From IMG/VR virus record IMGVR_UViG_3300012988_000016, positions 62,001-126,000 of that record: 64,000 bases of DNA; one strand, written 5' to 3'. The notes under the pieces were generated by a model. The model was given only the letters and a program-made list of their open reading frames with translations. It did no database searches and was not told where the DNA came from. Position numbers and translations under genes: made by a program. Positions 34,153 to 59,893 of this stretch are shown piece after piece (positions within the stretch are counted from its first letter, which is position 1; each line of letters begins with the position of its first letter).

Positions 34153-34158
34153 GGTGTA
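34153..34158 (+). promoter_or_regulatory. GGTGTA motif upstream of the SNF2 helicase gene
   Basis: 10 nt before ATG 34169; one of eight similarly placed copies. Confidence 0.6.
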
Positions 34159-34168
34159 CTGAACGCCG

Positions 34169-35950
34169 ATGCCCGAAGAAATCAAGCTTAGTGCCGAGCA
34201 GCAAAAACTATATGACGAACTGAAATCCGTACGATCACGGACAGACGTCAAGTTACCGCCCTCACCCCTTCTGAAGCAGCAAATAGTTGGGCTGGACGGT
34301 GAGCTCCAGCCTTTGGTCCCTAGATACTATCAAGTCCAAGGCATCTACCACATGCTTCGATTGAAGCGTATGGTGCTTGGTGACAGCACTGGTACGGGGA
34401 AGACATTTCAAACACTAGGCACACTCTGTTACCTTTGGGAGAAACGCCCAGAGACCAAGGTGGTGGTGGTTGCTCCCAAATCAGCCATCCGACAGTGGGC
34501 TGAAGAAATAGACCGCTTTACCAAGGGTGTGCAGGTCTACATCGCCACGGCCCCCAAGCAGAAGGGGGAGACCCCATTGGAGGCTCGGCAACGTGTCTAC
34601 GAGGCGTGGGCGGCCGCCCCTTCTGGGCCCAATGATCCAAAGGCAGTCCTGATTCTGAACTATGCCTTGCTGGTTAGGGATTGGAATCAAGGAGGTTTCC
34701 AACCATTGAAACCCAATGGTCAGCCAGACCCGAAGGCTCCTGTCCTGCCTGGATTGTTGGACAAAATAACCAAGCAGGTGGGTGAACATCTGACGGTCAT
34801 CTTCGATGAGGCGACTGCTTTCAAGTCGATGAAGACCAAGACTTGGGAAGTGGCTAGGTATCTGTCCGATCGTTCGAACCGAGTCTACGCCCTGACGGCC
34901 ACACTGCTCAAGAACAACCTCATGGAAGGCTATTGCATCTACAAGGCCATCTTGCCCTCCCTGTTTGGGGCGAAGACCAAGTTCATGGAGGACTACACCT
35001 TCTTCGAACTCAAGAGTGTGGGAAAGGCCAAAGTGCCGGTCGTCAAGGGCTACAAGAACTTGGATCACTTCAAGTCCAAGATCGATCTCTACTTCTTGGG
35101 TCGTCAGAAGCACGTCATCTCCAATGAGCTGCCCACTCTGACTACCCGAGAAATAACCTGCGAGCTGAATGGTGCGGAGACGTTGAAGTACAGAGAAGCT
35201 CTGTCAGGCCTTTTGGAGTTGGGGGATGGCCAGATCAAGGAGTTCGAGGAAACCAAGGCGCTGACCTCACTCATCTACTGTCAGCAAATAGTCAACTCCT
35301 TGTCGCTACTAAAGTTCAATGAGGGTGATGAGGTAGGTGGATTTAACTTAGACTTGACCAGCTCCAAAATAGGTTCGCTGTGCAGCAAAGAGCAGGCCTT
35401 GTTGGATCTGCTATCCGAGGAATTGGAGGATGAAAAGGTCATCGTCTACACTCGGTTTGAGAGTCTGGTCGGAAGACTGCAAGAAATACTCAAGAAGAAC
35501 GGTATCAAGTCGGTCCGAATCACCGGTAAAGAGAAGGACGTGGATCGCCAGAAGGCCAAGGTGGCCTTCCAAAATCTCAAGTCTGATGTTCGGGTGGTGT
35601 TCATCACCGACGCTGGTAGCGAAGCGATCAATCTTCAGGCAGCAGCCGGCATGGTGTTCTATGACCAACCCTGGTCATGGGGCGCTTACGTCCAAATACT
35701 AGGGCGCATGATCCGTATCGGTTCCCCTCACAAGGGGGTGATGGCCTACCATCTGTTGGCCGAACTGCCAGAAATATCGGTTAAAGACCGAAAAACTATT
35801 GACCATCACGTTCTGGGGATGCTCCGGAAAAAGAAAAACCTAATCGACAAGGTGTTGGGCGAGGCCGCCATTGGAGCTCTCGAATTCGAGAGCGAGGGTG
35901 GTTCATCTCTCAAGGATCTTGTTCGAGCTATGCAAGGAAAAGCAGCGTAA
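34169..35950 (+). CDS. SNF2/SF2-family helicase
   Basis: Walker A GDSTGTGKT; VIFDEATA; LTATLLKN; C-terminal SEAINLQ and QILGRMIRIG. Confidence 0.92.
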   Translation: MPEEIKLSAEQQKLYDELKSVRSRTDVKLPPSPLLKQQIVGLDGELQPLVPRYYQVQGIYHMLRLKRMVLGDSTGTGKTFQTLGTLCYLWEKRPETKVVVVAPKSAIRQWAEEIDRFTKGVQVYIATAPKQKGETPLEARQRVYEAWAAAPSGPNDPKAVLILNYALLVRDWNQGGFQPLKPNGQPDPKAPVLPGLLDKITKQVGEHLTVIFDEATAFKSMKTKTWEVARYLSDRSNRVYALTATLLKNNLMEGYCIYKAILPSLFGAKTKFMEDYTFFELKSVGKAKVPVVKGYKNLDHFKSKIDLYFLGRQKHVISNELPTLTTREITCELNGAETLKYREALSGLLELGDGQIKEFEETKALTSLIYCQQIVNSLSLLKFNEGDEVGGFNLDLTSSKIGSLCSKEQALLDLLSEELEDEKVIVYTRFESLVGRLQEILKKNGIKSVRITGKEKDVDRQKAKVAFQNLKSDVRVVFITDAGSEAINLQAAAGMVFYDQPWSWGAYVQILGRMIRIGSPHKGVMAYHLLAELPEISVKDRKTIDHHVLGMLRKKKNLIDKVLGEAAIGALEFESEGGSSLKDLVRAMQGKAA

Positions 35951-36882
35951 TGGATATATGCACACGCTGTGGTCTCAAACCACTAACAGGATGTATGCCG
36001 AATGGCACCCTGTTGGGCGAAGGCGATTTGATGCGTCATTGCCCAAATATGGCCAGGAAACTGAAAATCGAACATGTGAGGGAACGGCTGGACCTCGACA
36101 TTAGAGAATCCAAATCAATCCCTTCCAGCCCTCTCTTCTCACCCTCTACCAATGGTCCGCCATTGGTAGATCTGACTCAGCAAAATCTTCTGATCAGAGG
36201 TGTGACTCGTGCGGGGTTCTTACCTCATCTCAAACTTGCTTTGGTGGGCAAGATTTGGACCAACCCCACCTACGCATACAAGGTGGTGGGCGACGCTCGA
36301 TTGCGTGACGTGTATGTCGGCAATGAAGCGTATCGGAGTCGTGCCGCCACCGCTAGAGAGCAGACAGAGAACAACAACGCCATCGCTGACTTGGTGGGCA
36401 AGGATTACGACCTAGTGGTCATCCTTCTAGGGACGTTGGGGCATAAGAATGTGGCGGCCCCCGGGATCCTCAGAGAAGCGTTGATGCATCGTGAAATGCT
36501 GGGCAAGCCAACGTGGCTTTTCCAGAGCAGTGACCCTAGGTACGAATGGCGACACTCAAAGGATGCTGAGTCAGAGCTGTTCATTGAGCACTTCCAGGTC
36601 ATCAGATTAACCTCTGACGATCAAACCCCCGATGATGAGCGTGAACTGGAGAACAGCCACATTACGGTCGATGACGGCAAAACAGAGCCGGCGGACCTCA
36701 ATGAGTTGGTTGAGGAATACGAAGAACCAGTAGTCAATGTCCCTTCCCGCAGCAAAAAACCCTCGGTCAAGCCTCCTATCAAAGAACCAGTTACGCCTCA
36801 ATCCGACGAGATTGTGGCCGGCTTCGGTGGCGGCCCAGGTGGCAACCGCAAGAAGAAGTACAACAACAAGGGAGGTTGGTGA
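35950..36882 (+). CDS. putative degenerate helicase loader (DnaC/IstB-like remnant)
   Basis: N-terminal Cys cluster (CTRCG...GC...C); LLIRG...YDLVVILLG...LREALMHREMLGKPTWL resembles DnaC-like folds but has no GKT; directly upstream of the DnaB-like gene. Confidence 0.4.
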   Translation: MDICTRCGLKPLTGCMPNGTLLGEGDLMRHCPNMARKLKIEHVRERLDLDIRESKSIPSSPLFSPSTNGPPLVDLTQQNLLIRGVTRAGFLPHLKLALVGKIWTNPTYAYKVVGDARLRDVYVGNEAYRSRAATAREQTENNNAIADLVGKDYDLVVILLGTLGHKNVAAPGILREALMHREMLGKPTWLFQSSDPRYEWRHSKDAESELFIEHFQVIRLTSDDQTPDDERELENSHITVDDGKTEPADLNELVEEYEEPVVNVPSRSKKPSVKPPIKEPVTPQSDEIVAGFGGGPGGNRKKKYNNKGGW

Positions 36883-38357
36883 TGTCTAACAGTAAGAGTG
36901 TATTGCGGGGGGTCATCGATTTCGGAGACGGGAAGCTTTCCGAAAAAGCCATCGGAAGCAACTTCAGCTTCTTGAAAAATTCTAGGTACGAGTGGAGCAA
37001 TCCGGATGAACGGAAGATCTACGATTTCATCATCAAGTATCACCAGGAAAGTCTCGAACCTCCCAACGCTTTGACGCTCAGAGACTATTTTGGTCCAGAG
37101 CGAGCTGCCGATTATGCGGTGATCGAGAAGCTGAAAGACATTCATTCAGCAGCCATCTACGAACGTTCGGCGTACCGTACTCTCGTAAACTCCTTGTTGG
37201 AGGCTCAGAATCAGAACAAGTATCTGGTCCTTTTGACGGAGACCCAAGAGATCGTCACCAAAGGGCGGATCGTCGATAAAGAACAACTGAAAGGCCTGGT
37301 AGACGGCAAGAAGTACTACGAGCAGAAGATCATTGACCTGATCCCCGCCAATTCCAACGCCATCACCTTTGGCGATGTGACGCAGGACGTCCAAAAAGAA
37401 CGTGATGCTTACAAGGTAGCCAAGAGCAATCAGACCAAAGTGTGGGGCAGGTTCACTGGTTTGGAGCATATTGACCTTGCGTTTCACGGTATCAAGCCTG
37501 GCGAACTATGGATCCATGCGGCTGAGCCTGGCAATCTGAAGACCGCTTTCGCGACCAATTGGTCCTACAACCTGATTACCCGCTATCGTGCGAACGTGCT
37601 CTATGTCAGTCTTGAGATGAAGTACGAGCATCTTCGGAAGATTATGTGTGCCATGCACACATCGAACGGTATCTTCACCAAGCAAGGGTATGCTCCCTTG
37701 GACTACACCAAAATACGTGATGGTGAACTGACCCCAGAACAGGAACAGTTCTACGATCTAGCGTTGAATGACTTCGAGTCCAATCGGGACTACTGTCGTA
37801 TGCACATCTGGGTCCCAGACAGGGATGTGACGGTGGCCGATATCCGCAACTATGCGGAACAGCTACACAAGAACCTGGAAATAGGCCTGATTGTCATTGA
37901 TCAGGGTGAATTGGTCAAACCTCCTAGGGCCTACAAGGATTTGACCAGCGAGCAAAATGCCGTCATCCGTGAGATGAAGTTGATGGCGATGCATTTCAAT
38001 GGTGGTGAAAGCATCCCCATCCTGGATCTTCACCAGATTAACCGTACTGGTATGACCGCTAACGAGAAGAACAAGAGTACCCCCGAGGAACTTGGCCAGT
38101 ACAAATACCGTGATTTGTCGTACGCCAATCAGGCGGAACGTTCGGCGGACTACATCACCACCACCTACGCCCCCAAGGAATTGATCGAGCAGGGCTACGC
38201 CATCATCAGCTGTATGAAGTCTCGCGACAATCGAAAGTTTGACCTAGGCCGAATCGGCGTCGACATGACGTGTCACCGACTCAGGAATTGGGACCCCAGT
38301 GTGACAGGGTTCGGGGCCGATATGACGCAAGACGATTACGCCAACTCGGGGCTCTAA
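36882..38357 (+). CDS. dnaB: DnaB-like replicative helicase
   Basis: GGAGG RBS; FTGLEHID...GIKPGELWIHAAEPGNLKT; LYVSLEM; LIVIDQ; HQINR; IISCMKSRD. Confidence 0.85.
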   Translation: MSNSKSVLRGVIDFGDGKLSEKAIGSNFSFLKNSRYEWSNPDERKIYDFIIKYHQESLEPPNALTLRDYFGPERAADYAVIEKLKDIHSAAIYERSAYRTLVNSLLEAQNQNKYLVLLTETQEIVTKGRIVDKEQLKGLVDGKKYYEQKIIDLIPANSNAITFGDVTQDVQKERDAYKVAKSNQTKVWGRFTGLEHIDLAFHGIKPGELWIHAAEPGNLKTAFATNWSYNLITRYRANVLYVSLEMKYEHLRKIMCAMHTSNGIFTKQGYAPLDYTKIRDGELTPEQEQFYDLALNDFESNRDYCRMHIWVPDRDVTVADIRNYAEQLHKNLEIGLIVIDQGELVKPPRAYKDLTSEQNAVIREMKLMAMHFNGGESIPILDLHQINRTGMTANEKNKSTPEELGQYKYRDLSYANQAERSADYITTTYAPKELIEQGYAIISCMKSRDNRKFDLGRIGVDMTCHRLRNWDPSVTGFGADMTQDDYANSGL

Positions 38358-38358
38358 G

Positions 38359-38973
38359 ATGGCCAATAACGAAGCAGCCATCAAGGCATGGTTCGCCATG
38401 CGGCGTGAAGCGATCCATGAAATGATAACGGCCCATGATGTGTTGAGGCTACATGGGGTATCGTTCCGCCACTCTACCGACAGGGAGGAGCAGTTCAGCT
38501 GCCCATTCCATGGTCAGGACAACAAGCCGTCTGCCAGGGTGTATACGGCAAAGGCTGATAGTCGATCTCATGTTTGGTGCTTTGTTTGCCAACAACCGTG
38601 GGATGCCATCAGTCTTTGGAAGAAATTCTCTGGAGAGGAGAAAAAACACAACCAGATCCTCATCGAGATGGAGCGTCATCTCGGGATCAAGACCCCAGAA
38701 GTACCGGAAGGCGTGCACGCTGTTGCTCAAGTCGACGATACCGACAAGACCAGTTATGCGATCTTCTTGGACTTATGCGAACATCGTCTCAAAGAAGCAC
38801 GGGAAAATTATCTGGCTCAAGACGATATGAATGGGTTCTTGATCGCAGGGTCCATTCTTGACAAGTTGATCTCCAGAGTGTCGGATGGGCGGCTTCAGTA
38901 CGTGAAGGCGATCGAGTTGCTCAAGCAGTTGATAGACAAGATCGGTGACCGTATCCGTGGTGAGACGGCTTAA
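38359..38973 (+). CDS. stand-alone CHC2 zinc-finger protein (primase zinc-binding domain only)
   Basis: CPFHGQDNKPSA...WCFVC; only 204 aa with no TOPRIM acidic motifs. Confidence 0.8.
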   Translation: MANNEAAIKAWFAMRREAIHEMITAHDVLRLHGVSFRHSTDREEQFSCPFHGQDNKPSARVYTAKADSRSHVWCFVCQQPWDAISLWKKFSGEEKKHNQILIEMERHLGIKTPEVPEGVHAVAQVDDTDKTSYAIFLDLCEHRLKEARENYLAQDDMNGFLIAGSILDKLISRVSDGRLQYVKAIELLKQLIDKIGDRIRGETA

Positions 38974-39397
38974 GCTACCCACTAGAGAGATGGGGGACGT
39001 CAGGCTGTTGGTAATCGAACAGCAGCCTGACGGCTCTTGGGAAGATGAATGGGAGCTCCTTAGGAAAACCCCATTCGGTGCACAATTCAGCGTAATCTCC
39101 AAAGAGGTGCTGGATCATGCGTTGTACCGATTGTCCCGCCCATTGGTAGACGCCTTGGGGATCCCTCCGGCGGGAGCGTTGAAGAAAATACCGAAAGCCT
39201 CGAAAGAATGTTTTCGACGTGAACGGTGCATCTACCACGATAGCAAGAATTGCCATCCTGAAGGCAAGCAAATGCCGTGGTGTTACGAGCCTGACGGTGT
39301 AGAAGGTGAAGAGATCCGTCAAACGGCCACGAGGGCAATTCAGGAGTGGCGTGATGGGGTCTATTTGGTTGTGATTCAAGAGGATCAAGATGTCTGA
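38945..39397 (+). CDS. hypothetical Cys-cluster protein
   Basis: 150 aa; CFRRERC...C...WC; overlaps both neighbours. Confidence 0.65.
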   Translation: MTVSVVRRLKLPTREMGDVRLLVIEQQPDGSWEDEWELLRKTPFGAQFSVISKEVLDHALYRLSRPLVDALGIPPAGALKKIPKASKECFRRERCIYHDSKNCHPEGKQMPWCYEPDGVEGEEIRQTATRAIQEWRDGVYLVVIQEDQDV

Positions 39398-42197: not shown

Positions 42198-42214
42198 AAT
42201 AGCTCTAGAGAGCC

Positions 42215-42796: not shown

Positions 42797-42805
42797 ATCC
42801 GCAGC

Positions 42806-43415: not shown

Positions 43416-43426
43416 GCTTCCATCTT

Positions 43427-43432
43427 GGTGTA
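43427..43432 (+). promoter_or_regulatory. GGTGTA motif upstream of the AAA ATPase gene
   Basis: 12 nt before ATG 43445, directly after the terminator. Confidence 0.6.
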
Positions 43433-43444
43433 GAGGATAGAATC

Positions 43445-45010
43445 ATGAACGAAGACCTGAAGTTCCATCTGCGATCAATCACTCGATTCATCTACTTCGT
43501 CACTGACGAAGAAGACCTCTTCATCGAAGACATGAAGAAATCGCTTGAAGACCTCAAACAGCAGACTTTCGTCTACAACAGTGCCTTTGGGTTGCAGCCG
43601 ATCAAGAATGTGACGGACGATTGGAGGCTCAGAAGCCATAATACGGACGATAAGACCGAGAACATTCAGGCGGCACTGACGAAGATCTATACTGATGATC
43701 CGATGCAGTTCCGTAACTTCTACATCATCACCGATCCAGATCGTTGGTTGAAAGAGGAGTATCTGGTCCGCCGATTCCTCAACATCGCCCACCAGCTGAC
43801 CAGTGATGACAAGAACATCAAGATCCTGATTTTCGTTGGACCCCGACTGGTGATCCCTCAGAAGCTTCGCCGATACATTGAAGTGGTGCACGACAAGGGG
43901 ATGGCTGAAGAGCAGACGACAGAGATCCTGCAGAACATCTGCACACATTTGGAAATGCCTTTGCCAGATGTACGCCCTTTCAAAGGGCTGACCAGGTACG
44001 AGATCGATGCTGCGGTGGCGCAAAGCGTGATCAAGAATCGAGTCAAAGACCCAACCAAGAAGGTCGTTTTTTCCAAGGACATTTTGGATTACAAGCGACG
44101 TCAACTTAAGAAGACAGATCTGCTAGAATACCAGGATACGACGGGATTCACGTTCGATGCTTTGGGGGGTGCGGATCGCTTCAAAGCTTGGGCCATGGAG
44201 ACCAAAGACGCTTGGACTGAAGAAGGGCAGGCGTTCGGACTTACTCCGCCGAGAGGTGTCCTGTTGGCTGGCATCTGGGGATGTGGCAAATCCCTTGCCG
44301 TCAAGGCATTGGCCAACGCCTGGGGTTTGCAGGTTGTTCGTTTGGAACTGGGCAAACTTCGTAGCAGCGGCGTGGGCGATTCAGAAGCCAATGTCTACAA
44401 GGCGTTGCATTTGATCGAAGCGGTCGCCCCCTGTGTGGTGATGATCGATGAAGCTGAGAAGTCTCTCTCTGGAGCAGCCTCATCGGCTCAAACTGATTCA
44501 GGAACCACTAGCCGCATGTTGGCTAGCCTGTCGACTTGGATTCAAGAAACCAATGCGCCAGTATGCCTGGCATTGACGGCCAATACCCTCAATGGTTTGC
44601 CGACCGAGATCATCAATCGTATGGACGAACGCTTCTTCTTCGATCTGCCAACTGAAGATGAGCGAATGGATATTCTCAAGATCCATCTGCGAAAGACCAA
44701 GCAAGACCTGAAGCGATTCAACTTCGCCATCCTGGCTGAGGCGGCCAACAACCTGGTTGGTCGAGAGATCGAACAAGCCATCAGAGCTGCTATGCGGCGT
44801 TCGTACAACCTCCAGAAGGAAAGCCTGGATCCGGAAGTCTTGTTGGATCAGTTGAAGACCAAACCTCGTTTGCTCAGGACAATGGGGGATGCGGTCAAGG
44901 AATTGCTCGATTGGGTTGGCTTCGATCCTGAGGTTGGGGAAGGCGTGCGGGCCAAGTTCGCCTCTTCTGACAGGGTTAAGATGTTTTCAGGTCGTGTCAA
45001 AAATGACTGA
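43445..45010 (+). CDS. Ycf46-like AAA+ ATPase
   Basis: Degenerate N-terminal AAA-like domain; PRGVLLAGIWGCGKS; APCVVMIDEAEK; DSGTTSRML; TAN..LP.E...MDERFFFDLP; LVGREIEQA. Confidence 0.88.
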   Translation: MNEDLKFHLRSITRFIYFVTDEEDLFIEDMKKSLEDLKQQTFVYNSAFGLQPIKNVTDDWRLRSHNTDDKTENIQAALTKIYTDDPMQFRNFYIITDPDRWLKEEYLVRRFLNIAHQLTSDDKNIKILIFVGPRLVIPQKLRRYIEVVHDKGMAEEQTTEILQNICTHLEMPLPDVRPFKGLTRYEIDAAVAQSVIKNRVKDPTKKVVFSKDILDYKRRQLKKTDLLEYQDTTGFTFDALGGADRFKAWAMETKDAWTEEGQAFGLTPPRGVLLAGIWGCGKSLAVKALANAWGLQVVRLELGKLRSSGVGDSEANVYKALHLIEAVAPCVVMIDEAEKSLSGAASSAQTDSGTTSRMLASLSTWIQETNAPVCLALTANTLNGLPTEIINRMDERFFFDLPTEDERMDILKIHLRKTKQDLKRFNFAILAEAANNLVGREIEQAIRAAMRRSYNLQKESLDPEVLLDQLKTKPRLLRTMGDAVKELLDWVGFDPEVGEGVRAKFASSDRVKMFSGRVKND

Positions 45011-47130: not shown

Positions 47131-47131
47131 T

Positions 47132-47137
47132 GGTGTA
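47132..47137 (+). promoter_or_regulatory. GGTGTA(ATGT) motif upstream of the macrodomain gene
   Basis: 13 nt before ATG 47151. Confidence 0.6.
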
Positions 47138-47150
47138 ATGTGACGGCATC

Positions 47151-47639
47151 ATGCCGATCACATATCTGGAAGGCGATGCCACCTGCCCACAAATAGATGG
47201 CCCTAAGATTATTGCACACGTCGTCAACAGCAGTGGCGGTTGGGGCCGCGGTTTCGTCTTAGCGGTCTCCGACAGATGGTTGGGCCCTGAGCAACGGTAC
47301 CGCAAATGGTATGCCAGCAAGAAGAATTTCAAGTTAGGCGCCGTTCAGACCCTCCAAGTTGAGCCAGACATTTGGGTCTGCAACATGTTGGCTCAAGAGG
47401 GGTATCTGACTACCAAGAAACATGGGCCGCCGCTACGGCTGCCCCGCCTCAAAGAATGTTTGGACCTGTTGAAGGAAGCTGCCATTGAGAGGCATGCTTC
47501 CGTCCATATGCCTCGTATAGGATGCGGATTAGGTGGCTCTGATTGGGATGTGGTCGGCCTGATGGTCGAACAATCTTTGGGTGAAGTGCCGGTCTATGTG
47601 TACGATCTTTATCCTCAATCTGTAGTTCGCCAAACCTGA
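47151..47639 (+). CDS. macrodomain protein (ADP-ribose binding/hydrolase, TARG1/DarG-like class)
   Basis: ITYLEGDAT; IIAHVVNSSGGWGRGF; VHMPRIGCGLGG. Confidence 0.9.
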   Translation: MPITYLEGDATCPQIDGPKIIAHVVNSSGGWGRGFVLAVSDRWLGPEQRYRKWYASKKNFKLGAVQTLQVEPDIWVCNMLAQEGYLTTKKHGPPLRLPRLKECLDLLKEAAIERHASVHMPRIGCGLGGSDWDVVGLMVEQSLGEVPVYVYDLYPQSVVRQT

Positions 47640-47680
47640 CATAGATTGTCCTAGCTGAGGTTGACTCAGATGTGCCGCAC

Positions 47681-47686
47681 GGTGTA
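47681..47686 (+). promoter_or_regulatory. GGTGTA(AGAT) motif upstream of the vWA gene
   Basis: 9 nt before an in-frame ATG at 47696; the SD-led start is at 47780. Confidence 0.6.
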
Positions 47687-47779
47687 AGATGGGGCATGTA
47701 TGATGACGGCACTCCCTTTTGCGCTACCTGTCACTTGGTAGTCGTTGCCTGTTTGTGTGGTCATCCAAAGGAGAATTCA

Positions 47780-52419: not shown

Positions 52420-52422
52420 GCT

Positions 52423-52593
52423 TCAGGCCGCCTCTTCGATGGATTCACGGTTGAGACGGCGAGCACGCTTGCGAGAGCGGCGGATGTGCTGCTTGTCGAC
52501 GTTGGGGCGGTGACGGGTCTTGATGGTGCCGAGGGTGCAGCAGCCGTAGCGGCAGGTCTGATTTTCGCTGGGGGTATTGCCGTAGGGTTTCAT
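52423..52593 (-). CDS. small basic Cys-motif protein (56 aa, below the track cutoff)
   Basis: AGGAG RBS; MKPYGNTPSENQTCRYGCCTLGTIKTRHRPNVDKQHIRRSRKRARRLNRESIEEAA. Confidence 0.75.
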   Translation of the reverse strand: MKPYGNTPSENQTCRYGCCTLGTIKTRHRPNVDKQHIRRSRKRARRLNRESIEEAA

Positions 52594-52620
52594 GGGTGTC
52601 TCCTACCAGATAGAACGGAT

Positions 52621-52815
52621 TCAGGGGTTTTGAATTAAGGCTTCGTCAGCTTTTTGTTCTTCGGCTAGCTCAGCCTCGATGCCTTTGAGGAACACTTTGG
52701 CTGCCGCCACTTCGTAAGGATTGAACTGATCGACCGGCTGGTCGCGAACAAGGTATTGGACGATTCGATCGATTCGTTGATTGAATTCGGGGTCCGTGTA
52801 GGTTTGGGCGGCCAT
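52621..52815 (-). CDS. small hypothetical protein (64 aa)
   Basis: Probable start MAAQTYTDPEF; first gene of the divergent minus-strand unit. Confidence 0.6.
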   Translation of the reverse strand: MAAQTYTDPEFNQRIDRIVQYLVRDQPVDQFNPYEVAAAKVFLKGIEAELAEEQKADEALIQNP

Positions 52816-52872
52816 GATGATTGAACGGATGGTTCGAGAAATAGTTAAGACGCCGCAATTAGTCTTTTGTTT

Positions 52873-52878
52873 GGTGTA
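52873..52878 (+). promoter_or_regulatory. GGTGTA motif in the divergent intergenic region
   Basis: 8 nt before ATG 52887. Confidence 0.6.
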
Positions 52879-52886
52879 ACTGGACG

Positions 52887-53267
52887 ATGACAATGACATT
52901 TGTAGCAGTTCAGTTCAAAGAGAGTGAAACGTCGCACCAACTGGTCGAACGTTTCATGCAGACCTCCGCCGCCAAGGAGCTAAAGTTCACCCAATTGGAG
53001 GTGTTGGGCGTGCTTCTGTTGGGGAAGAACAAGTACTTGCGGTTCAGAACCGACAGCAGACACGTTCCAGAAATACTGGGCCAGCTGTTACTTGATGGTC
53101 GAGGTGTGGTGCACCAGGACGGGGGAGGCTATTCGGTCAAGTTGCCGTCAGGTAAGAAAGGTATCGCCTCAGCTGCCGCCATGCAGGCCATCGGAGACCC
53201 GACGCTGAAGAGGGTCTACAAGGGGACGGCCATCAAGCTGTGGGATCGGCAGTTTATGCCGTCTTAA
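52887..53267 (+). CDS. hypothetical protein
   Basis: 126 aa. Confidence 0.7.
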   Translation: MTMTFVAVQFKESETSHQLVERFMQTSAAKELKFTQLEVLGVLLLGKNKYLRFRTDSRHVPEILGQLLLDGRGVVHQDGGGYSVKLPSGKKGIASAAAMQAIGDPTLKRVYKGTAIKLWDRQFMPS

Positions 53268-53299
53268 AGCTTTCATCGGTTCCCCTAGGGTGGACGCCT

Positions 53300-54049: not shown

Positions 54050-54061
54050 GTTCTAGGGGTT

Positions 54062-54067
54062 GGTGTA
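54062..54067 (+). promoter_or_regulatory. GGTGTA motif upstream of clpX
   Basis: 9 nt before ATG 54077; no SD between motif and start. Confidence 0.6.
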
Positions 54068-54076
54068 AAGACCCCT

Positions 54077-55318
54077 ATGAGAAGCTGCGATCTTTGCCAA
54101 CGGCCTGAGAACGAAGTCAAGCAAATCGTCGAACTGATCAAGGATGGTCCTTGCATTTGCAATCGTTGTTTCGGCACAGCCGCCGGCTTGATGAATGCGG
54201 CTCAGAAGCCTAAAGAAGAGCCGCTACTTCTAAAACCCAAAGCAATTTACTCCCGTTTGGGCGATTATGTGGTGGGGCAAGATGCCTCCCGTCAAGATCT
54301 GTCAGTAGCGGTCTACAACCACTACAAGCGGCGTGACGCTGCTAAACGAGGCTTGTTGTTGCAGGATGTTGAGATTCAGAAGAGCAACATCCTGATCCTG
54401 GGTCCTAGCGGAACCGGCAAAACCCAGATGGCACGCACGCTAGCTAGACTGCTGAAGGTGCCATTCTTTGTCGGAGACGCCACTCGATTGACCCAGACGG
54501 GCTATGTGGGTGAGGATGTCGAAACGTTGGTTGAAGGCCTCGTAACAGCAGCTGGCAATGACCCTGAGAAGGCCGAGTGGGGGATCATCTTCCTGGATGA
54601 AGTGGACAAGATTGCTCGAAAGAGTGGTCGGGAAGCGGCTGGTTACCGAGACATCTCAGGAGAGGCGGTCCAGCAAGCACTGTTGAAGCTGCTGGAAGGT
54701 ACACAGTTGACGCTATCCAAAGGTGGCCTCAATGGTATGGGGAACGAGACCTACACGATCGATACCAGTAATATCCTGTTCATTTGTGCAGGATCGTTTG
54801 CTGGAATTGAGGAGTCGGTCAACCGTCGAAAGAATAAGCATGTGAAGGTGGGATTTGGTTCGGAATCCCGCCAACAGCACACCTCTGCAGAGGCCTATCT
54901 AGCGATTGAGGAAGAAGATTTGCTGGATTTCGGCCTGATTCCTGAAATGTTGGGCCGCATCCCTGTCAGGACTACCACCATCCCATTGACGGAAGATGAG
55001 ATGGTCAGGATTCTGACTGAACCCAAGGACGCCATCATTCGACAGGTCAAAGCCTTGTTTGAGATGGACGGTATCGATCTTCATTTTGATGATGAGGCGC
55101 TCCGAGCTATTGGCCAAAAAGCGATCAAGAGCCAGACAGGTGCGAGAGCGTTGCGGACTATCGTTGAACGGATCCTCAAAACCTATGCTTTTGAATGCCC
55201 CAGTGATCCTACCGTAAAAGGCATCATGATCACCAAGGCAGCGGTAGAGGGGACGGCTGAGGCGGCCATTTTGCGGGAACCTTTGGAAGTGCAGCCTCTT
55301 GCCATCCAGGCAGGCTGA
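54077..55318 (+). CDS. clpX: ClpX ATP-dependent unfoldase
   Basis: Zn-binding CDLC...CNRC; KSNILILGPSGTGKT; GYVG pore loop; IIFLDEVDKIARKS; VQQALLKLLEG; VGF ClpP-docking loop; TGARALR. Confidence 0.95.
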   Translation: MRSCDLCQRPENEVKQIVELIKDGPCICNRCFGTAAGLMNAAQKPKEEPLLLKPKAIYSRLGDYVVGQDASRQDLSVAVYNHYKRRDAAKRGLLLQDVEIQKSNILILGPSGTGKTQMARTLARLLKVPFFVGDATRLTQTGYVGEDVETLVEGLVTAAGNDPEKAEWGIIFLDEVDKIARKSGREAAGYRDISGEAVQQALLKLLEGTQLTLSKGGLNGMGNETYTIDTSNILFICAGSFAGIEESVNRRKNKHVKVGFGSESRQQHTSAEAYLAIEEEDLLDFGLIPEMLGRIPVRTTTIPLTEDEMVRILTEPKDAIIRQVKALFEMDGIDLHFDDEALRAIGQKAIKSQTGARALRTIVERILKTYAFECPSDPTVKGIMITKAAVEGTAEAAILREPLEVQPLAIQAG

Positions 55319-55354
55319 TAGTCCACTCATAGGGTCTCCCCTAGCAGGGAACCT

Positions 55355-56074
55355 ATGAGTCTTACCAAACGCATCCTCAGTCGCCATAAAGAAGCTGCTT
55401 TGACCTCCAGAGTGGCGCTCCGATTCAAGCAAGCTGACTATGACGGCAAGTTTTTGGGGAAGGACGCCCGACTTCAGTGGGGCCGCCATCAGTGGTTCCT
55501 GGAGGAGTTGCCGCAAAAGGGTAAGAAGAAGCTCAAGTCGAAGACCTTGCAAAATCCGTCTAGTTACGGAGCCTTCGATATGTGGATCCCTGAGAACATC
55601 CTTCACTTTGCCAAGCTGACCTCTTCAGACGACTTCGAAGCCATTGAGAAGAAGTTGTTGGAAGCCTACGATGAGGCGTACAAGCGCACCGCATCTCCTG
55701 ATCATAGGAATCAGAAAGAGACGGCCGCCCTTGAGCAGAACGACTGGATCAAAGGGATCAAGTGGTATGGTCAGGACGTCTTTTACCTCAATGTCATCCC
55801 TGAAGGGGTGGACGAGTTCGTGGCTGAGGGTAAGAATTTCAGTGTCAAGGTGAAGTGGGGGGAATTCGCGTCTTTCTCCCCTGATTCTGATTTTCAGCAA
55901 GCAGACCCGCACTATACCAAGTACGTCTCCAAGAGTCCGACCGCTGCTCGCAAGTTTTACATGATGCTGAAGCAGGATCCCAAGCAACTATCTAGCGTAT
56001 CGTGGGACCAATTTGGCGCTTGGCTGGATAAGAATAAGATCCCCTACGACACTCGTTTCTCTAGCTGGCACTGA
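55355..56074 (+). CDS. hypothetical protein with repeated R(V/I)xxR(H/F)KxA N-terminal motif
   Basis: 239 aa; KRILSRHKEAA-LTSRVALRFKQA. Confidence 0.75.
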   Translation: MSLTKRILSRHKEAALTSRVALRFKQADYDGKFLGKDARLQWGRHQWFLEELPQKGKKKLKSKTLQNPSSYGAFDMWIPENILHFAKLTSSDDFEAIEKKLLEAYDEAYKRTASPDHRNQKETAALEQNDWIKGIKWYGQDVFYLNVIPEGVDEFVAEGKNFSVKVKWGEFASFSPDSDFQQADPHYTKYVSKSPTAARKFYMMLKQDPKQLSSVSWDQFGAWLDKNKIPYDTRFSSWH

Positions 56075-56077
56075 CCC

Positions 56078-57454
56078 ATGCGCAACCCTTCTCAATTGGT
56101 AGCTAGGTACCGGTTCTCTATGGAGCACTCCTCCGAGAAGGAGATGGGGCATTACCTGAAGCTCCATCCTCACGCCAACCCAAAGAACCACAAGGTCAAG
56201 AAAGACCAGGATGGGGGTAAGGCGGAAGAGGAAGAAAAGTCTGATAAGGGTGGTAGCCCCAAAGATGAAAAGGGGCACGGCCAGCACCATGAGGACGATG
56301 AAGAGGTGGCGGTATCGAACAAGCAGAAGGTGGTGAACGTCTTCAATCGCTTGTCTGACAAGGCCAAAGCACTGATCACCTCAGCTCCAGCGGCTGTGCA
56401 GAAGTTCGTGGCAGATGAAGGTCACCGCAAGAAGGTGCTGAAAGATGCCACCTTGTCGGTCCTTAAAAGTCCCAAGGCTTACGCCAAAAACTTGGTCAAC
56501 ACTGCCAAGGAAGAGGTTCACGAATTCAAAGAGGCCGGTAAGGCGATCAAGGATGTGATTGCTGGCAAGAAGCTGGACGCACATCAGAAGAAAGCAGTCA
56601 AGACGGTGGCGATCCACATGGCTATTACCGCTGCTGCGGCTGCCCTGTCGACAACCGGCGTCTTCACAGGGGCGGCTTTTGTCGGTAAGGCGATGGCCAA
56701 AAAGGTAGCGATGAAGGCTGCCACCAAAGCACTGGAGAAGGTGCATCTCTTTGGGGAGCTTCACCACATCAGCCATGAGGCGATCCATGGTTTGGCAGAG
56801 ATGCTGGAAAGGGTGGCGTCAGAACAAGACGAGGATGATGAGGAAGAGCTCAGCCCTGAGGAAGCGCTGGCTGCTCTGGTGATGAAGAGCTTGTCGGATG
56901 TGTTGGAAGATTTCGAGGGGCAGGATATCGTAGAGGCGTTGGATGAAGCCTCAGATGAGAAGCAAAAAACTGCCTGGAAAATGACCACCGCTACAGCCTC
57001 TGATTTGCCAGGCCTTATCGCTAGAGCGCTTCAAACCGTCAAAGAGGTGCAAGGCATCCTGTCTGGCTTTGACCGCACCTTGATCGCTTCCCGTCACGAG
57101 TCTGATTTTGGAGACGGTAGGGTGGCTCAGACCTTCTGGGTCAAGTTCTTCAAAGATCTAGGCAAACCTCTGGCTACCCTTGAAGACGTGTCTTTTGACC
57201 TTGAAGGGATCTACCTGGAGAGTCGTGATCTTGCTGATGTGGCGAACGAGGCCAGGAATTTGCTGGTCTTGCCCAGGCGAGCCCTCATCACCTATGCGAT
57301 CTCGGACATTGACTTTTCGACCAACCCAACCACAGGGCAGGACGTCATTACCTACAGTGTGGCTGTATTGAAGGATTGGGCCAAGAATTTGGAGAGTTGG
57401 GTCAAGTCTGCTTCGACCAAACTTTCAGGATTGGCCCGTAAAGCTAAGGATTGA
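56078..57454 (+). CDS. highly charged hypothetical protein
   Basis: 458 aa; SQLVARYRF; Lys/Glu-rich; one Ala-rich hydrophobic stretch; acidic linker. Confidence 0.75.
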   Translation: MRNPSQLVARYRFSMEHSSEKEMGHYLKLHPHANPKNHKVKKDQDGGKAEEEEKSDKGGSPKDEKGHGQHHEDDEEVAVSNKQKVVNVFNRLSDKAKALITSAPAAVQKFVADEGHRKKVLKDATLSVLKSPKAYAKNLVNTAKEEVHEFKEAGKAIKDVIAGKKLDAHQKKAVKTVAIHMAITAAAAALSTTGVFTGAAFVGKAMAKKVAMKAATKALEKVHLFGELHHISHEAIHGLAEMLERVASEQDEDDEEELSPEEALAALVMKSLSDVLEDFEGQDIVEALDEASDEKQKTAWKMTTATASDLPGLIARALQTVKEVQGILSGFDRTLIASRHESDFGDGRVAQTFWVKFFKDLGKPLATLEDVSFDLEGIYLESRDLADVANEARNLLVLPRRALITYAISDIDFSTNPTTGQDVITYSVAVLKDWAKNLESWVKSASTKLSGLARKAKD

Positions 57455-57459
57455 GTTTT

Positions 57460-57465
57460 GGTGTA
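57460..57465 (+). promoter_or_regulatory. GGTGTA(AGAT) motif upstream of the DUF1848 gene
   Basis: 10 nt before GTG 57476. Confidence 0.6.
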
Positions 57466-57475
57466 AGATCTAGGG

Positions 57476-58324
57476 GTGAATCCTATCCAAAGTGGCGCCG
57501 CCGAGCTGATCCCCTATAGTTTGTCCAGGTGGACTGATGTTCCAGCTTCGAAATGGAACTGGTTCTTGATCCAGCTCAGTCAAGGGTGGATGACGGCTTT
57601 CGATCAGCGGACCTCCATCCCTCAGAAGTGGAGTCTCAAACCTGAGGACACGTTGGGGCTCATCTTCTGGACCAAGGATCCGACCAATCTGATCCTGTCT
57701 AGAGGCCTGCTTGCCCCTTACAATGTGAAGATTCATGTGACGGCGACCGGCTGGGAAGAGGTTGAGAAAGGGGCTCCTAACAGGTTGGAATCAGCTTTGC
57801 TGCTCAAAGAGACGGTCAAAGAATTTGGAGCCGCCAATGTGACGTGGCGTTTCTCTCCTGTACCGATCGTTCCAGATGTGTTGGAGAGGTTTCAAGTCCT
57901 TGCTCAAGCGGCCTGTGCGGCCGGCTTGGATGCGGTCTATCTGTCGTTTCTTCAGCCCAACGATTTGGTTCCAGAGACCCGCACTCCAGCCGAACGGCTA
58001 GAGTTGTTGCAACAGATGGCCGCTTTGGGCCGCATGTATGGGATTGAGGTTCGGCTCTGCAATGAGGATCGTCTCCTTGAGGGGGTAGACCCATACCCCA
58101 ACCTGACCTCCGGAGTTTGTGCAGATCCGAAAGACTTTGCCCTATCCTCCAGAGAGGTGCCGCCCTCAGAGGGGTGTGGGTGTGTGATGGCGGTCGACCC
58201 TTTCACGGCCAATGAGTCGTGTGGATTTGGCTGCACCTACTGTTATGCCGCCGATAAGAGTCAAGCACCTAAGAAGTACAATACCACTCGTAATTTACCT
58301 GTGATACAATCTAGGGATGGTTGA
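57476..58324 (+). CDS. DUF1848-family protein (SplB-like, C-terminal CxxxCxxC)
   Basis: SLSRWTDVPA...WF; LIFWTKDP; VTWRFSPV; GCGC...ESCGFGCTYCYA. Confidence 0.82.
   Translation: MNPIQSGAAELIPYSLSRWTDVPASKWNWFLIQLSQGWMTAFDQRTSIPQKWSLKPEDTLGLIFWTKDPTNLILSRGLLAPYNVKIHVTATGWEEVEKGAPNRLESALLLKETVKEFGAANVTWRFSPVPIVPDVLERFQVLAQAACAAGLDAVYLSFLQPNDLVPETRTPAERLELLQQMAALGRMYGIEVRLCNEDRLLEGVDPYPNLTSGVCADPKDFALSSREVPPSEGCGCVMAVDPFTANESCGFGCTYCYAADKSQAPKKYNTTRNLPVIQSRDG
58302..58310 (+). promoter_or_regulatory. extended -10 promoter (TGnTACAAT), leaderless geometry
   Basis: TGATACAAT ends 6 nt before ATG 58317. Confidence 0.55.
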
Positions 58325-58586
58325 ACTAGAAGATTCGGAGGATTTCAGCTTAGAAGAGGCCGATCAGGCCGTATTGGTTGACAATCCAGGCAGTTTTGCA
58401 CAGCAGGTCAGCAGACAGGTGGGTGATTGGTTGGCCGCCAATCCTTTGCCTGTTGGACAATCCCCCAAGTTGTCATACGAATTGCTGCGGAAAAAACCCC
58501 ATCTGTACAGCCGAGTCACGATAGGTTCTCATAAAGTCTTGGTTTATCGGCTCAATTGGCTGAAGGAGGATCAAGATGGCGTGTGA
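58317..58586 (+). CDS. hypothetical protein
   Basis: 89 aa; overlaps both neighbours. Confidence 0.6.
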   Translation: MVELEDSEDFSLEEADQAVLVDNPGSFAQQVSRQVGDWLAANPLPVGQSPKLSYELLRKKPHLYSRVTIGSHKVLVYRLNWLKEDQDGV

Positions 58587-59007
58587 AAATGGCGGCTGTA
58601 GTTGTAGTGGATCTTGTCAAGAGAAATTCCACGATACATGCGGCTGCACACTGGAGGGTATTCCGGTCACCTACGGAACCGACCTGCCACCCTATATGAC
58701 GACGGCTTGCGATCGAGATCGCAAGAATAACGTTTGGGTTGAAGGTCCGGTTGATAGCAACGGTCAGGGAGGGATCTGTTTGCTTGATACTCTCTGTGAA
58801 CAACAAGTCGTCGATGTGTTGCAGCGGGACGATCGGGCTCGTGCCGATTTGGTTAGAGTGACCTCTCACCCCAGATTGTTGGAACTGGCTGCCACTGTCC
58901 CACATTTGCCAAAAACTAATGATGGCGATGTGTTGCAGAAAGAAATGAATCAGAACACCATCCCTTTCTACGCCATATTTCGTGGTCAGCCACCCTTTGC
59001 TCAGTGA
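58576..59007 (+). CDS. hypothetical protein with Cys-rich N-terminus
   Basis: AGGAGG RBS; MACENGGCSCSGSCQEKFHDTCGC. Confidence 0.7.
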   Translation: MACENGGCSCSGSCQEKFHDTCGCTLEGIPVTYGTDLPPYMTTACDRDRKNNVWVEGPVDSNGQGGICLLDTLCEQQVVDVLQRDDRARADLVRVTSHPRLLELAATVPHLPKTNDGDVLQKEMNQNTIPFYAIFRGQPPFAQ

Positions 59008-59013
59008 AATCAG

Positions 59014-59340
59014 ATGAGTTTTGGTCGTAAAATTCAGCGTAAAAATCGCCCTGATCTGATGCGGGCCTCCAACCAATTGTCGCGAGCACTCGATTCTCTG
59101 AAGACGATCGAGGCGGCGGGACAACTGACCGAGCTGGGTCCTGTCATCAAACAAACCCATCAGCTGATCCTAACCGCCTCAGAAGATGTGAGGGACGTCG
59201 CCGTAGAAATGGCCCGCCATCGGGCAGTGTTGGAGATCCTGACAAGGCATAACCAGGAGGCCAGGGTGCTTCTCCTCAAAGACCCCGAGGAAGACGTGGT
59301 TATGCCGGAGTTGAAATTGGAACTAGCAGAGGTCAAGTGA
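59014..59340 (+). CDS. helical hypothetical protein
   Basis: 108 aa. Confidence 0.65.
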   Translation: MSFGRKIQRKNRPDLMRASNQLSRALDSLKTIEAAGQLTELGPVIKQTHQLILTASEDVRDVAVEMARHRAVLEILTRHNQEARVLLLKDPEEDVVMPELKLELAEVK

Positions 59341-59864
59341 AAACCAATGAAAACCAGATTGTTGATCCAGCCAGTCGTCCGACGCGCCCCCTCATCTCCG
59401 CTCGAATGGGAGACGCTGATGCAGGTAGCTCTGACGAGAGCTCAGGCGGTTCAGGATCGGAGAGCCTTGATGTTGCAGACCGCCATCCCCCAGGGCAGGA
59501 GCGAGCAAGTGTTGAGGAGCCTGGGAATCATTTGCGAAAACGACGTATTGCGGGAATTTCCACTCCCCACGACGTAGCCAAAATAGAAGAGGCCTTGCTT
59601 GAGGCCTTCAAGCAAGGCCTGCCTGAAGAAGCTTTCAGGTTGTCGAGGGACTTGGCTGAGCTGGCCTACACGGCAGTAAAAGAGGCCGCCAAAGCTCGTT
59701 TTCACTCGAACTTTGGATCAAAGGCTTGCACTTCTTGTGAGGGGTTGCGGGCTGGCCCTGGGGTGGTGGCAACCTGTGTTCAGGTAAGTCTGTGCTATTA
59801 CACGAACTTCAAGGAAGGGGATCTGACTCCCAAGCAAGCAAGAATGCTTCGAGTATTGGGGTGA
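59337..59864 (+). CDS. hypothetical protein with C-terminal Cys4 motif
   Basis: GTGA overlap; ACTSC...TC.....C. Confidence 0.65.
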   Translation: MKTNENQIVDPASRPTRPLISARMGDADAGSSDESSGGSGSESLDVADRHPPGQERASVEEPGNHLRKRRIAGISTPHDVAKIEEALLEAFKQGLPEEAFRLSRDLAELAYTAVKEAAKARFHSNFGSKACTSCEGLRAGPGVVATCVQVSLCYYTNFKEGDLTPKQARMLRVLG

Positions 59865-59887
59865 GGGGTTGCGATCTTTGGATTCGT

Positions 59888-59893
59888 GGTGTA
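59888..59893 (+). promoter_or_regulatory. GGTGTA(AGTT) motif
   Basis: 12 nt before an in-frame ATG at 59906 of the next gene. Confidence 0.55.

What the first reader, a model, noticed from the sequence alone, without database searches (positions are those of the whole stretch)
34153..59893. YGGTGTA element 8-13 nt upstream of eight non-structural genes: candidate phage promoter for leaderless mRNAs
Sequence: GGTGTA at 34153, 43427, 47132, 47681, 52873, 54062, 57460 and 59888. Each copy is intergenic, preceded by a pyrimidine, and 10, 12, 13, 9, 8, 9, 10 and 12 nt from a start codon. I found none before the structural genes. Four copies extend to TAnnnT (TAATGT, TAAGAT twice, TAAGTT), and most of these genes lack a good SD. 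A classical TGnTACAAT 6 nt before ATG 58317 has similar geometry. Inference: GGTG plus a TA-initiated -10 places the transcription start at or near the start codon, defining an early/middle regulon read by an alternative or phage-encoded sigma factor.
Basis: partly seen in the sequence, partly recalled or inferred. Interest (0 to 1): 0.7.

Follow-up and report, generated by a model that had tools for sequence, protein, structure and literature searches.

The report
Huge-phage promoter motif for leaderless genes
A strict 7-base signal (YGGTGTA) sits 9-10 bases before about 100 start codons in this 309-kb soil phage and its relatives, and most likely is a phage-specific promoter that makes messenger RNAs with almost no leader.

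Summary
All eight GGTGTA copies are at the stated places. In the 308,895-bp phage contig that holds the window, 105 of 200 copies lie 6-15 nt (peak 9-10) before a start codon, and 100 of those 105 follow a pyrimidine.

The element is nearly absent from translationally coupled genes. Its genes are poor in Shine-Dalgarno (SD) sequences. It occurs back-to-back between divergent genes whose ATGs are only 34-55 nt apart, and it is mildly depleted inside genes on both strands.

Five related huge-phage contigs (GC 54-68%) show the same signal: 34-82 copies of GGTGTA-N8-11-ATG against 1-6 for a reversed control. It is kept before orthologous AAA-ATPase and ClpX-like genes.

Two results point to transcription rather than translation. 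Some copies are followed by a 20-28 nt leader with its own AGGAG. The element also precedes non-coding RNAs: a candidate tracrRNA in this genome and a suppressor tRNA in a relative, each starting 12 nt downstream.

The TAnnnT "-10" idea is not supported here. No sigma factor or RNA polymerase gene was found in this 65%-complete contig. No RNA data exist, so start sites remain inferred. Closest known analogue: phiEco32 gp36 promoters (AATGTA).

The parts
34152..34171 (+). M1 element cGGTGTA, 10-nt spacer, ATG 34169. Heads the SNF2 helicase to family-A DNA polymerase gene block (34169-43356).
43426..43447 (+). M1 tGGTGTA, 12-nt spacer, ATG 43445 (AAA ATPase, 521 aa). A hairpin plus T-run lies just upstream.
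   Evidence: M1 is conserved before the orthologue in 9 of 10 related loci.
47131..47153 (+). M1 tGGTGTA, 13-nt spacer, ATG 47151 (phosphatase-like, 162 aa). The stop codon TGA of the gene before it abuts the element.
47680..47698 (+). M1 cGGTGTA, 9-nt spacer, ATG 47696 (VWA-domain protein, 830 aa).
52872..52889 (+). M1 tGGTGTA, 8-nt spacer, ATG 52887 (126 aa, unknown function). It faces away from a minus-strand M2 promoter.
54061..54079 (+). M1 tGGTGTA, 9-nt spacer, ATG 54077 (ClpX-like ATPase, 413 aa). Heads the 54077-57454 block.
   Evidence: M1 lies before the orthologue in 5 of 5 related loci where it was found.
57459..57478 (+). M1 tGGTGTA, 10-nt spacer, GTG 57476 (DUF1848, 282 aa). Heads the 57476-59864 block. 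The non-ATG start is an exception to the leaderless model.
59887..59908 (+). M1 tGGTGTA, 12-nt spacer, ATG 59906 (240 aa). Heads the 59906-61512 block.
52813..52848 (-). Second promoter class (M2, ECF-sigma-like): TTAAC (52846-52842), 13-nt gap, CCGTTCAA (52828-52821), 5-nt spacer, ATG 52815. It drives a small leftward operon.
   Evidence: family defined
52591..52640 (-). M2 copy with a leader: TTAAT (52638-52634), CCGTTCTA (52618-52611), 17-nt leader holding TAGGAGA, ATG 52593.

Best explanation
YGGTGTA (called M1 here) is the core element of a promoter class specific to a clade of soil huge phages. It acts on DNA. RNA polymerase, directed by a factor not yet identified, starts about 9-11 nt downstream of the final A. 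A phage-encoded sigma-like protein in the manner of phiEco32 gp36 or T4 gp55 is the most likely factor; a host alternative sigma is less likely.

In most copies the start falls on or within about 2 nt of the AUG. These mRNAs are therefore leaderless, carry no SD and are read by 5'-end-dependent initiation. Where the coding start lies further away, the same element gives a short leader with an ordinary SD. The same element also drives non-coding RNAs.

M1 heads operon-like blocks of non-structural genes: replication, ATPases/chaperones, DNA modification and nucleotide metabolism. Structural genes sit in long SD-led operons. A second, bipartite ECF-like class (M2: CTTAAC-N16/17-CCGTTCTA-N5/6-ATG) serves mostly small genes of unknown function in this phage only.

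Shown: enrichment, geometry, conservation and context.
For: 1. Genome-wide excess with tight spacing. 84 of 200 copies have an ATG 8-13 nt downstream, against 3-12% for controls. The spacing peaks at 9 (41 copies) and 10 (26 copies), with Y at -1 in 100 of 105.
2. Operon logic. M1 is found at 3 of 172 genes that overlap or abut the gene before them, 26 of 59 genes with 6-25 nt gaps and 37 of 88 divergent starts. In the window it heads each tightly packed gene block.
3. Thirteen back-to-back pairs TACACC-N3-19-GGTGTA lie between divergent ATGs only 34-55 nt apart. That leaves no room for other promoters.
4. SD-like words occur before 21% of M1 genes and 0% of M2 genes. The figures are 35-43% for other genes and 14% at random positions. 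Start codons are ATG in 91 of 105.
5. Depletion inside coding sequence in both orientations against synonymous-codon shuffles: sense 14 vs 21.1 +/- 4.1, antisense 24 vs 35.7 +/- 4.7. Antisense depletion fits a DNA-level signal.
6. Conservation across the clade. Five related contigs of 251-417 kb (GC 54-68%) hold 34-82 GGTGTA-N8-11-ATG each, against 1-6 for the reversed control. M1 is kept before orthologous AAA-ATPase and ClpX-like genes at 47-57% amino-acid identity, while the flanking DNA is not alignable.
7. Uncoupling from the ribosome site. In relatives, and in a few places here, M1 lies 20-35 nt before the ATG with an AGGAG/GGAGG 6-9 nt before the ATG.
8. Non-coding targets. In this contig an orphan cGGTGTA (205444-205449) lies 12 nt before the anti-repeat of a candidate tracrRNA, which ends in a strong terminator next to a Cas9-like gene and CRISPR array. 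In relative G005 a stand-alone tRNA(UCA) starts 12 nt after M1, which itself follows a hairpin. Other tRNAs start 28, 42 and 45 nt after M1.
9. Precedent. phiEco32 middle/late promoters are a single AATGTA centred at -11.5 and read by the phage sigma gp36 (PMC12276001). A '-10 motif next to the ORF' drives leaderless genes in Deinococcus-Thermus (PMC12340547).
Against: - No transcript 5' ends are available. No RNA run was listed, so the start site and the leaderless state are inferred from geometry.
- No sigma-70 family, T7-like or multisubunit RNA polymerase gene was detected in this contig. The giant proteins checked are tail- or structural-like or unassigned.
- Sigma-related genes in relatives are either tandem region-4 proteins without region 2 or a region-2-only protein that is not conserved.
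- About 38 YGGTGTA copies remain inside genes, so the 7-mer alone may not be sufficient, or internal promoters exist.
- The spacer is not AT-rich.
- One window copy (57460) precedes a GTG, which is poor for leaderless initiation.
- The terminator scan shows no clear pairing of terminators with M1.
Confidence: 0.75

Rival explanations
1. M1 is an operator or half-site for a phage DNA-binding regulator, for example the tandem sigma-70-region-4 HTH proteins of relatives. It overlaps promoters and switches them on or off, but it is not the core promoter element.
For: Thirteen copies form inverted repeats TACACC-N3/4-GGTGTA, which look like dimer operators. In three of them the whole intergenic region is a palindrome. 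All six positions are strict, as for sequence-specific duplex binding. Relatives encode 209-243 aa proteins with two region-4 HTH domains.
Against: About 80 of 105 sites are single and directional, with no conserved partner half-site. No other conserved promoter element accompanies them. The distance to the ATG or RNA start is fixed within +/-1-2 nt. A site at about -16 to -10 is where sigma region 2 binds, not a usual activator position. The tandem region-4 gene was not found in this contig.
Confidence: 0.1
2. M1 acts in the RNA as a non-SD translation-initiation signal. It would be read by the ribosome, or by a phage translation factor, at a fixed distance from the AUG.
For: The spacing to the start codon is tight and an SD is lacking. 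GGUG can pair with CACC of the 16S 3' tail (general knowledge).
Against: - The flanking Y and UA break complementarity to the anti-SD.
- GGUG lies 10-15 nt from the AUG, too far for that part of the SD.
- Other genes of the same phages use ordinary AGGAG, so the host anti-SD is canonical.
- M1 is almost never embedded in upstream coding sequence (3 of 172), although SDs are.
- Long-spacer copies carry a separate SD.
- M1 precedes a tracrRNA candidate and tRNAs.
- M1 is depleted on the antisense strand of genes.
- In divergent pairs, each transcript would have to start inside the opposite gene.
Confidence: 0.06
3. M1 marks an RNA-processing site. A phage or host endonuclease would cut polycistronic RNA about 10 nt downstream and release leaderless mRNAs, tRNA precursors and the tracrRNA.
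For: The fixed distance to functional RNA 5' ends includes non-coding RNAs. M1 often directly follows an upstream stop codon or tRNA.
Against: Divergent back-to-back pairs with 34-55 nt between ATGs would need transcripts that start inside the opposite gene on both strands. Antisense depletion in coding sequence suggests action on DNA. No conserved RNA structure surrounds the motif.
Confidence: 0.04

Closest known systems
phiEco32 middle/late promoters read by the phage sigma gp36 (PMC12276001)
   Same: A single short, strict element without a canonical -35 hexamer, ending in TGTA (AATGTA vs GGTGTA). It lies about 9 nt before the start (centred at -11.5) and serves the non-early genes of a phage that uses host core polymerase.
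   Different: The first two bases differ (GG vs AA), and a pyrimidine is required at -1. No gp36-like gene was found. gp36 also contacts -37/-34, whereas M1 shows no conserved upstream base. M1 transcripts would be leaderless. The phages are unrelated: 250-440 kb soil phages against a 77-kb coliphage.
Promoter -10 motif adjacent to ORFs that gives leaderless mRNA in Deinococcus-Thermus (PMC12340547); by recollection also in Actinobacteria and in Thermus phage phiYS40
   Same: There are two classes of upstream signal: a promoter element directly before the ATG, or an SD. There is no leader, ATG starts dominate, and a large share of genes is involved.
   Different: Those use the housekeeping TANNNT. 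M1 is GGTGTA with no conserved final T. It is specific to a phage clade and conserved across phages of very different GC content.
T4 late promoters (TATAAATA, gp55/gp33) and AR9/phiKZ late promoters (AACA-N6-TA/G; TATG) (PMC5312081)
   Same: A short single-element promoter, about 100 copies per giant phage genome, many genes with their own promoter, and some internal copies.
   Different: AR9 and phiKZ use phage multisubunit polymerases, which were not detected here. AR9 leaders are 26-491 nt long rather than absent. The sequences are unrelated.
ECF (group 4) sigma promoters, compared with the second class M2
   Same: M2 has the AAC-containing -35 (CTTAAC), a 16-17 bp spacer and the CGT-containing -10 (CCGTTCTA).
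   Different: The ATG lies 5-6 nt after the -10, a leaderless layout. M2 is found only in this contig and not in relatives. No ECF sigma gene was found.

Membership tests
Sigma-70 extended -10 promoter (TGnTATAAT) | T at the last position of the -10 hexamer (T-7) is conserved | tested here: not met
   25 T among 105 sites at that column, information content 0.0. It appears only in some copies of relative G004 (GGTGTAATAT).
Sigma-70 extended -10 promoter (TGnTATAAT) | TG separated from TA by one base; a -35 hexamer is optional | tested here: not met
   In GGTGTA the TG abuts the TA. No upstream conservation is seen. Sigma-70-like sites are not enriched in 42-61 kb (5 found vs 9.5 expected).
phiEco32 gp36-type single-element promoter | Hexamer ending in TGTA centred near -11.5 relative to the mapped start | tested here: inconclusive
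   TGTA is shared, and the geometry to ATG or RNA starts fits a start 9-11 nt downstream. No start sites are mapped.
phiEco32 gp36-type single-element promoter | A phage-encoded divergent sigma (gp36-like) is present | tested here: inconclusive
   No sigma-70 family match in this 65%-complete contig. Relatives have region-4-only or non-conserved region-2-only proteins.
Leaderless-gene architecture (promoter element adjacent to ORF) | Promoter element within about 20 nt of the start codon, no SD, ATG start | tested here: met
   Spacing of 9-10 nt, SD-like words in 21% against 35-43% of other genes, and ATG in 91 of 105.
Leaderless-gene architecture (promoter element adjacent to ORF) | Primary transcript 5' end at or within a few nt of the AUG | not testable with these tools
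   No RNA run was listed for this sequence.
Shine-Dalgarno ribosome-binding site | Complementarity to the 16S 3' tail at 5-10 nt from the start, present also at operon-internal genes | tested here: not met
   Y at -1 and UA break the pairing. GGUG lies 10-15 nt from the AUG. M1 is found at 3 of 172 coupled genes. A separate AGGAG is present in long-spacer copies.
Phage RNA-polymerase promoter (T7-like, or phiKZ/AR9 multisubunit) | The phage encodes the matching polymerase | tested here: inconclusive
   PF00940, PF00562 and PF00623 found nothing in the contig. The PF00940 control rang nowhere, very divergent enzymes can escape Pfam, and 35% of the genome is missing.
ECF sigma promoter (for M2) | AAC in the -35, CGT in the -10, 16-17 bp spacer | tested here: met
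   CTTAAC-N16/17-CCGTTCTA in about 20-30 copies. CGTTCTA-N4-7-ATG occurs 17 times against 2 for the control.

The most novel reading that the evidence does not exclude
M1 is read by a phage-encoded specificity factor, or a polymerase, that current profiles do not recognise and that is conserved across a clade of 250-440 kb soil phages. This would form a largely host-independent expression system that fuses the transcription start to the start codon for about a quarter of the genes. The same switch would time a phage CRISPR tracrRNA and suppressor tRNAs.
Probability: 0.3. Interest if true: 0.7.

Novelty: new member of a known kind. Interest (0 to 1): 0.55.

Why it matters
The motif gives a simple rule for annotating an uncultivated clade of huge phages. 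It fixes true start codons, marks transcription units and separates gene classes: M1, M2 and SD-led structural operons.

It shows that leaderless expression can dominate the non-structural programme of a 300-480 kb phage, and that the signal is kept across phages of very different GC content. That points to a phage-borne reader worth finding.

It also supplies a compact, strict promoter, a candidate tracrRNA for a phage Cas9, and a promoter for suppressor tRNAs. All of these can be tested in vitro. It is not a new principle, because single-element phage promoters and leaderless mRNAs are known.

Tried and rejected
- Close phage relatives by DNA: none. The nearest deposited phage (LR745208.1, 33% identity in the polymerase) does not clearly use M1 in the 43 kb examined.
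- RNA-seq runs: none was listed. DNA runs are soil metagenomes only.
- Sigma and polymerase searches in the contig were negative.
- The giant proteins gave no polymerase. A DxDGD word in the 1349-aa protein (window 28231-32280) led to DUF4815-like structural look-alikes, not a polymerase.
- The region-2-only 157-aa protein of relative G001, itself preceded by M1, has only 3 homologues in 1.8 billion representatives and none in the other relatives. It is rejected as the conserved reader.
- M2-led proteins are an RNA ligase, ProQ-C-like proteins and unknowns. None is a sigma.
- Host inference through the ClpX-like gene failed: 41-48% identity to bacteria of many phyla.
- A possible late motif TAGATGTAA in structural intergenic regions is not enriched. 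GATGTA is intergenic in 9% of its copies, which equals the intergenic share of the genome.
- The terminator scan was uninformative: 27 found vs 18.3 expected.
- My first M2 pattern had a wrong gap range and was redone.
Most hits look like chance single matches, so it gives no census.
Full report
**What the sequence is.** The window is bases 62001-126000 of a single 308,895-bp IMG/VR virus contig (GC 52.8%, linear, CheckV completeness 65%). It comes from soil metagenomes and has no close deposited relative. The first ~33 kb of the window hold very large genes that are structural or of unknown function. The second half holds replication and accessory genes: an SNF2 helicase, a family-A DNA polymerase, AAA ATPases, a ClpX-like protein, a VWA protein, a phosphatase and DUF1848. 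Almost all genes lie on the + strand.

**Checking the observation.**
Each follows a pyrimidine, and the stated spacers are correct.
- In the window, GGTGTA-N8-13-ATG occurs 8 times against 1.84 +/- 1.24 in shuffles.
- In the whole contig, 84 of 200 copies have the next ATG 8-13 nt downstream (42%). The figure is 3-12% for 27 control hexamers, and the single-base variants tried are barely enriched.
- 105 copies precede a start codon that opens an ORF of at least 40 aa. The spacer peaks at 9 nt (41 copies) and 10 nt (26 copies). Starts are ATG in 91.
- The aligned sites give Y-GGTGTA-n-n-G(weak). Nothing is conserved upstream, and there is no T where a TAnnnT hexamer would end.
- I call this element M1. 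The ~95 other copies match the chance expectation.

**Where M1 sits.**
- With a home-made hexamer-based gene caller (438 genes; noisy in the right half of the contig), M1 precedes 3 of 172 genes that overlap or abut the previous gene. It precedes 26 of 59 genes with a 6-25 nt gap and 37 of 88 divergent starts.
- In the window it heads every tightly packed block: 34169-43356, 43445 onward, 47151, 47696, 52887-54049, 54077-57454, 57476-59864 and 59906-61512.
- Thirteen pairs TACACC-N3-19-GGTGTA lie between divergent ATGs only 34-55 nt apart.
- SD-like words occur before 21% of M1 genes. The figures are 35-43% for other genes and 14% at random positions.
- Genes without M1, especially structural ones, show ordinary AGGAG sites. 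The host ribosome therefore reads a canonical SD.
- Inside coding sequence, YGGTGTA is about one third rarer than in synonymous-codon shuffles, in both orientations: sense 14 vs 21.1 +/- 4.1, antisense 24 vs 35.7 +/- 4.7.

**A second class.** K-mer enrichment among the remaining genes revealed CTTAAC-N16/17-CCGTTCTA-N5/6-ATG (M2). Its AAC/CGT pattern and spacer are those of ECF-sigma promoters. The ATG is again only 5-6 nt away, and none of these genes has an SD. CGTTCTA-N4-7-ATG occurs 17 times here against 2 for the control, but is not enriched in relatives. Two M2 copies lie on the minus strand of the window. One is leaderless (ATG 52815) and one has a 17-nt leader with an SD (ATG 52593). 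M2-led genes encode an RNA ligase, ProQ-C-like proteins and small unknowns.

**Relatives.**
- The AAA ATPase (43445) found 14 IMG/VR loci at 49-57% identity, on contigs up to 417 kb with GC 54-68%.
- M1 precedes the orthologue in 9 of 10 distinct loci. It precedes the ClpX-like orthologue in 5 of 5, although the surrounding intergenic DNA is unalignable.
- Five whole contigs hold 34-82 GGTGTA-N8-11-ATG each, against 1-6 for the reversed pattern.
- More distant loci (29-33% identity, GC 36-40%) and LR745208.1 do not show it.
- Double-sided back-to-back pairs also turned up in other contigs of 407 and 437 kb.

**Transcription or translation?** Three results separate the two.
- First, a separate SD can follow M1. 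In relatives a second group of M1 copies lies 20-28 nt before the ATG, with AGGAG/GGAGG 6-9 nt before the ATG (for example L003, L008, L011, L015). This contig has similar cases at 274888, 284360 and 302962. M1 and the ribosome site are therefore separable. M1 then sits about 10 nt before the start of a short leader.
- Second, M1 precedes non-coding RNAs.
  - The contig encodes a Cas9-like protein (205573-208635; HNH_4, RuvC_III and Cas9_a domains). Next to it is a CRISPR array of 36-nt repeats (208741 onward).
  - Between a divergent methylase gene and cas9 lies an orphan cGGTGTA (205444-205449). Twelve nt after it comes GATCTAAAGGGGTCGCTAAC, complementary to the first 20 nt of the repeat. 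The alignment scores 27 against 17 +/- 3.1 for random segments, with 11 of 2994 reaching it.
  - Two hairpins follow, then a 14-bp stem with a T-run just before the cas9 ATG. This is the layout of a tracrRNA.
  - In relative G005, a stand-alone tRNA(UCA) begins 12 nt after M1, which follows a hairpin. A tRNA(UUA), a tRNA-Lys and a tRNA-His begin 28, 42 and 45 nt after M1 in G001 and G002.
- Third, three observations are hard to explain by an RNA-level signal: the divergent pairs, the antisense depletion and the near-absence from upstream coding sequence.

M1 is also a poor SD. Y at -1 and UA after GGUG break complementarity to the 16S tail, and the distance to the AUG is too long.

**Who reads it?** This is unresolved.
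- Pfam and NCBIfam models for sigma-70 regions, T7-like polymerase and the beta/beta' catalytic domains found nothing in this contig. Thirty-five percent of the genome is missing.
- Four relatives encode 209-243 aa proteins with two sigma-70 region-4 domains next to a 5'-3' exonuclease gene.
- One relative has a 157-aa region-2-only protein with M1 before it. It is not conserved.
- None of these has a homologue in this contig.
- M1 is conserved across phages of very different GC content, whereas M2 is lineage-specific. That favours a phage-borne reader for M1. This is inference.

**Comparison with known systems.**
- The nearest analogue is the phiEco32 middle/late promoter: a single AATGTA centred at -11.5, read by the divergent phage sigma gp36, with T-12 at the fork junction and G-11 as the first unpaired base (PMC12276001). 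If GGTGTA is placed the same way, the start falls 9 nt after the final A. That is 0-2 nt before the ATG for the 8-10 nt spacers, and 3 nt before the tracrRNA anti-repeat and the tRNA.
- The overall layout, a promoter element directly before the ORF or else an SD, matches what has been validated in Deinococcus-Thermus (PMC12340547).
- AR9 and phiKZ late promoters are also short single elements (AACA-N6-TA/G; TATG). They are read by phage multisubunit polymerases and give long leaders (PMC5312081).
- A full-text search found no paper that describes GGTGTA as a phage promoter, and none on leaderless expression in huge phages.

**Verdict.** The TAnnnT detail and the lone TGnTACAAT are not supported. 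This is a new member of a known kind: single-element phage promoters and leaderless expression. Its practical value lies in annotating and dissecting uncultivated huge phages.

Noticed in passing
contig G000:205573-209700 (outside the window): Phage-encoded type II CRISPR-Cas. It comprises a Cas9-like gene (1020 aa; HNH_4, RuvC_III and Cas9_a domains), an array of 36-nt repeats (8 perfect plus degenerate copies), and a candidate ~100-nt tracrRNA at about 205460-205560 between an M1 element and a strong terminator.
   Followed up: partly
window 52591-52848, minus strand; about 20-30 further copies in contig 143-309 kb: Second promoter-like class, M2: CTTAAC-N16/17-CCGTTCTA, with the ATG 5-6 nt downstream. 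It is ECF-sigma-like, specific to this contig and not enriched in relatives. M2-like sites also lie upstream of the two tRNA genes at contig 303361 and 304334.
   Followed up: partly
relatives G001-G005 (loci L145-L174): Relatives carry 10-50 tRNA genes each, in clusters, including suppressor-type tRNAs with anticodons UCA and UUA. This hints at stop-codon reassignment in part of the clade. This contig has only 2 tRNAs, so its tRNA region is probably in the missing part.
   Followed up: partly
contig 240118, 259726, 305447 (outside the window): In three back-to-back M1 pairs the whole 34-44 nt region between the divergent ATGs is a perfect or near-perfect palindrome, spacers included. No reason is known; a cruciform, a shared optimal spacer or an origin by inverted duplication are possibilities.
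   Followed up: no
contig 5600, 30735, 37248, 71064 (the last is window 9064): TAGATGTAA-like words occur in long intergenic regions of the structural module and could be a late promoter related to M1. GATGTA as such is not enriched in intergenic DNA, so this is unsupported.
   Followed up: partly
window 54051-54076: The M1 copy before the ClpX-like gene lies in the loop of a 6-bp hairpin (TAGGGG...CCCCTA) whose 3' arm abuts the ATG. One other copy (contig 178572) lies in a terminator loop.
   Followed up: no
loci L021-L024 (relatives G003, G005, G004, G001): A conserved 209-243 aa protein with two tandem sigma-70 region-4 HTH domains and no region 2 lies downstream of a 5'-3' exonuclease gene. 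No homologue was found in this contig.
   Followed up: partly
window 51872-52899, minus strand: A small leftward operon of 3-4 short ORFs is embedded in an otherwise rightward region. The longest-ORF start of its first gene (52899) overlaps the + strand gene at 52887. The M2 geometry suggests ATG 52815 as the true start.
   Followed up: partly
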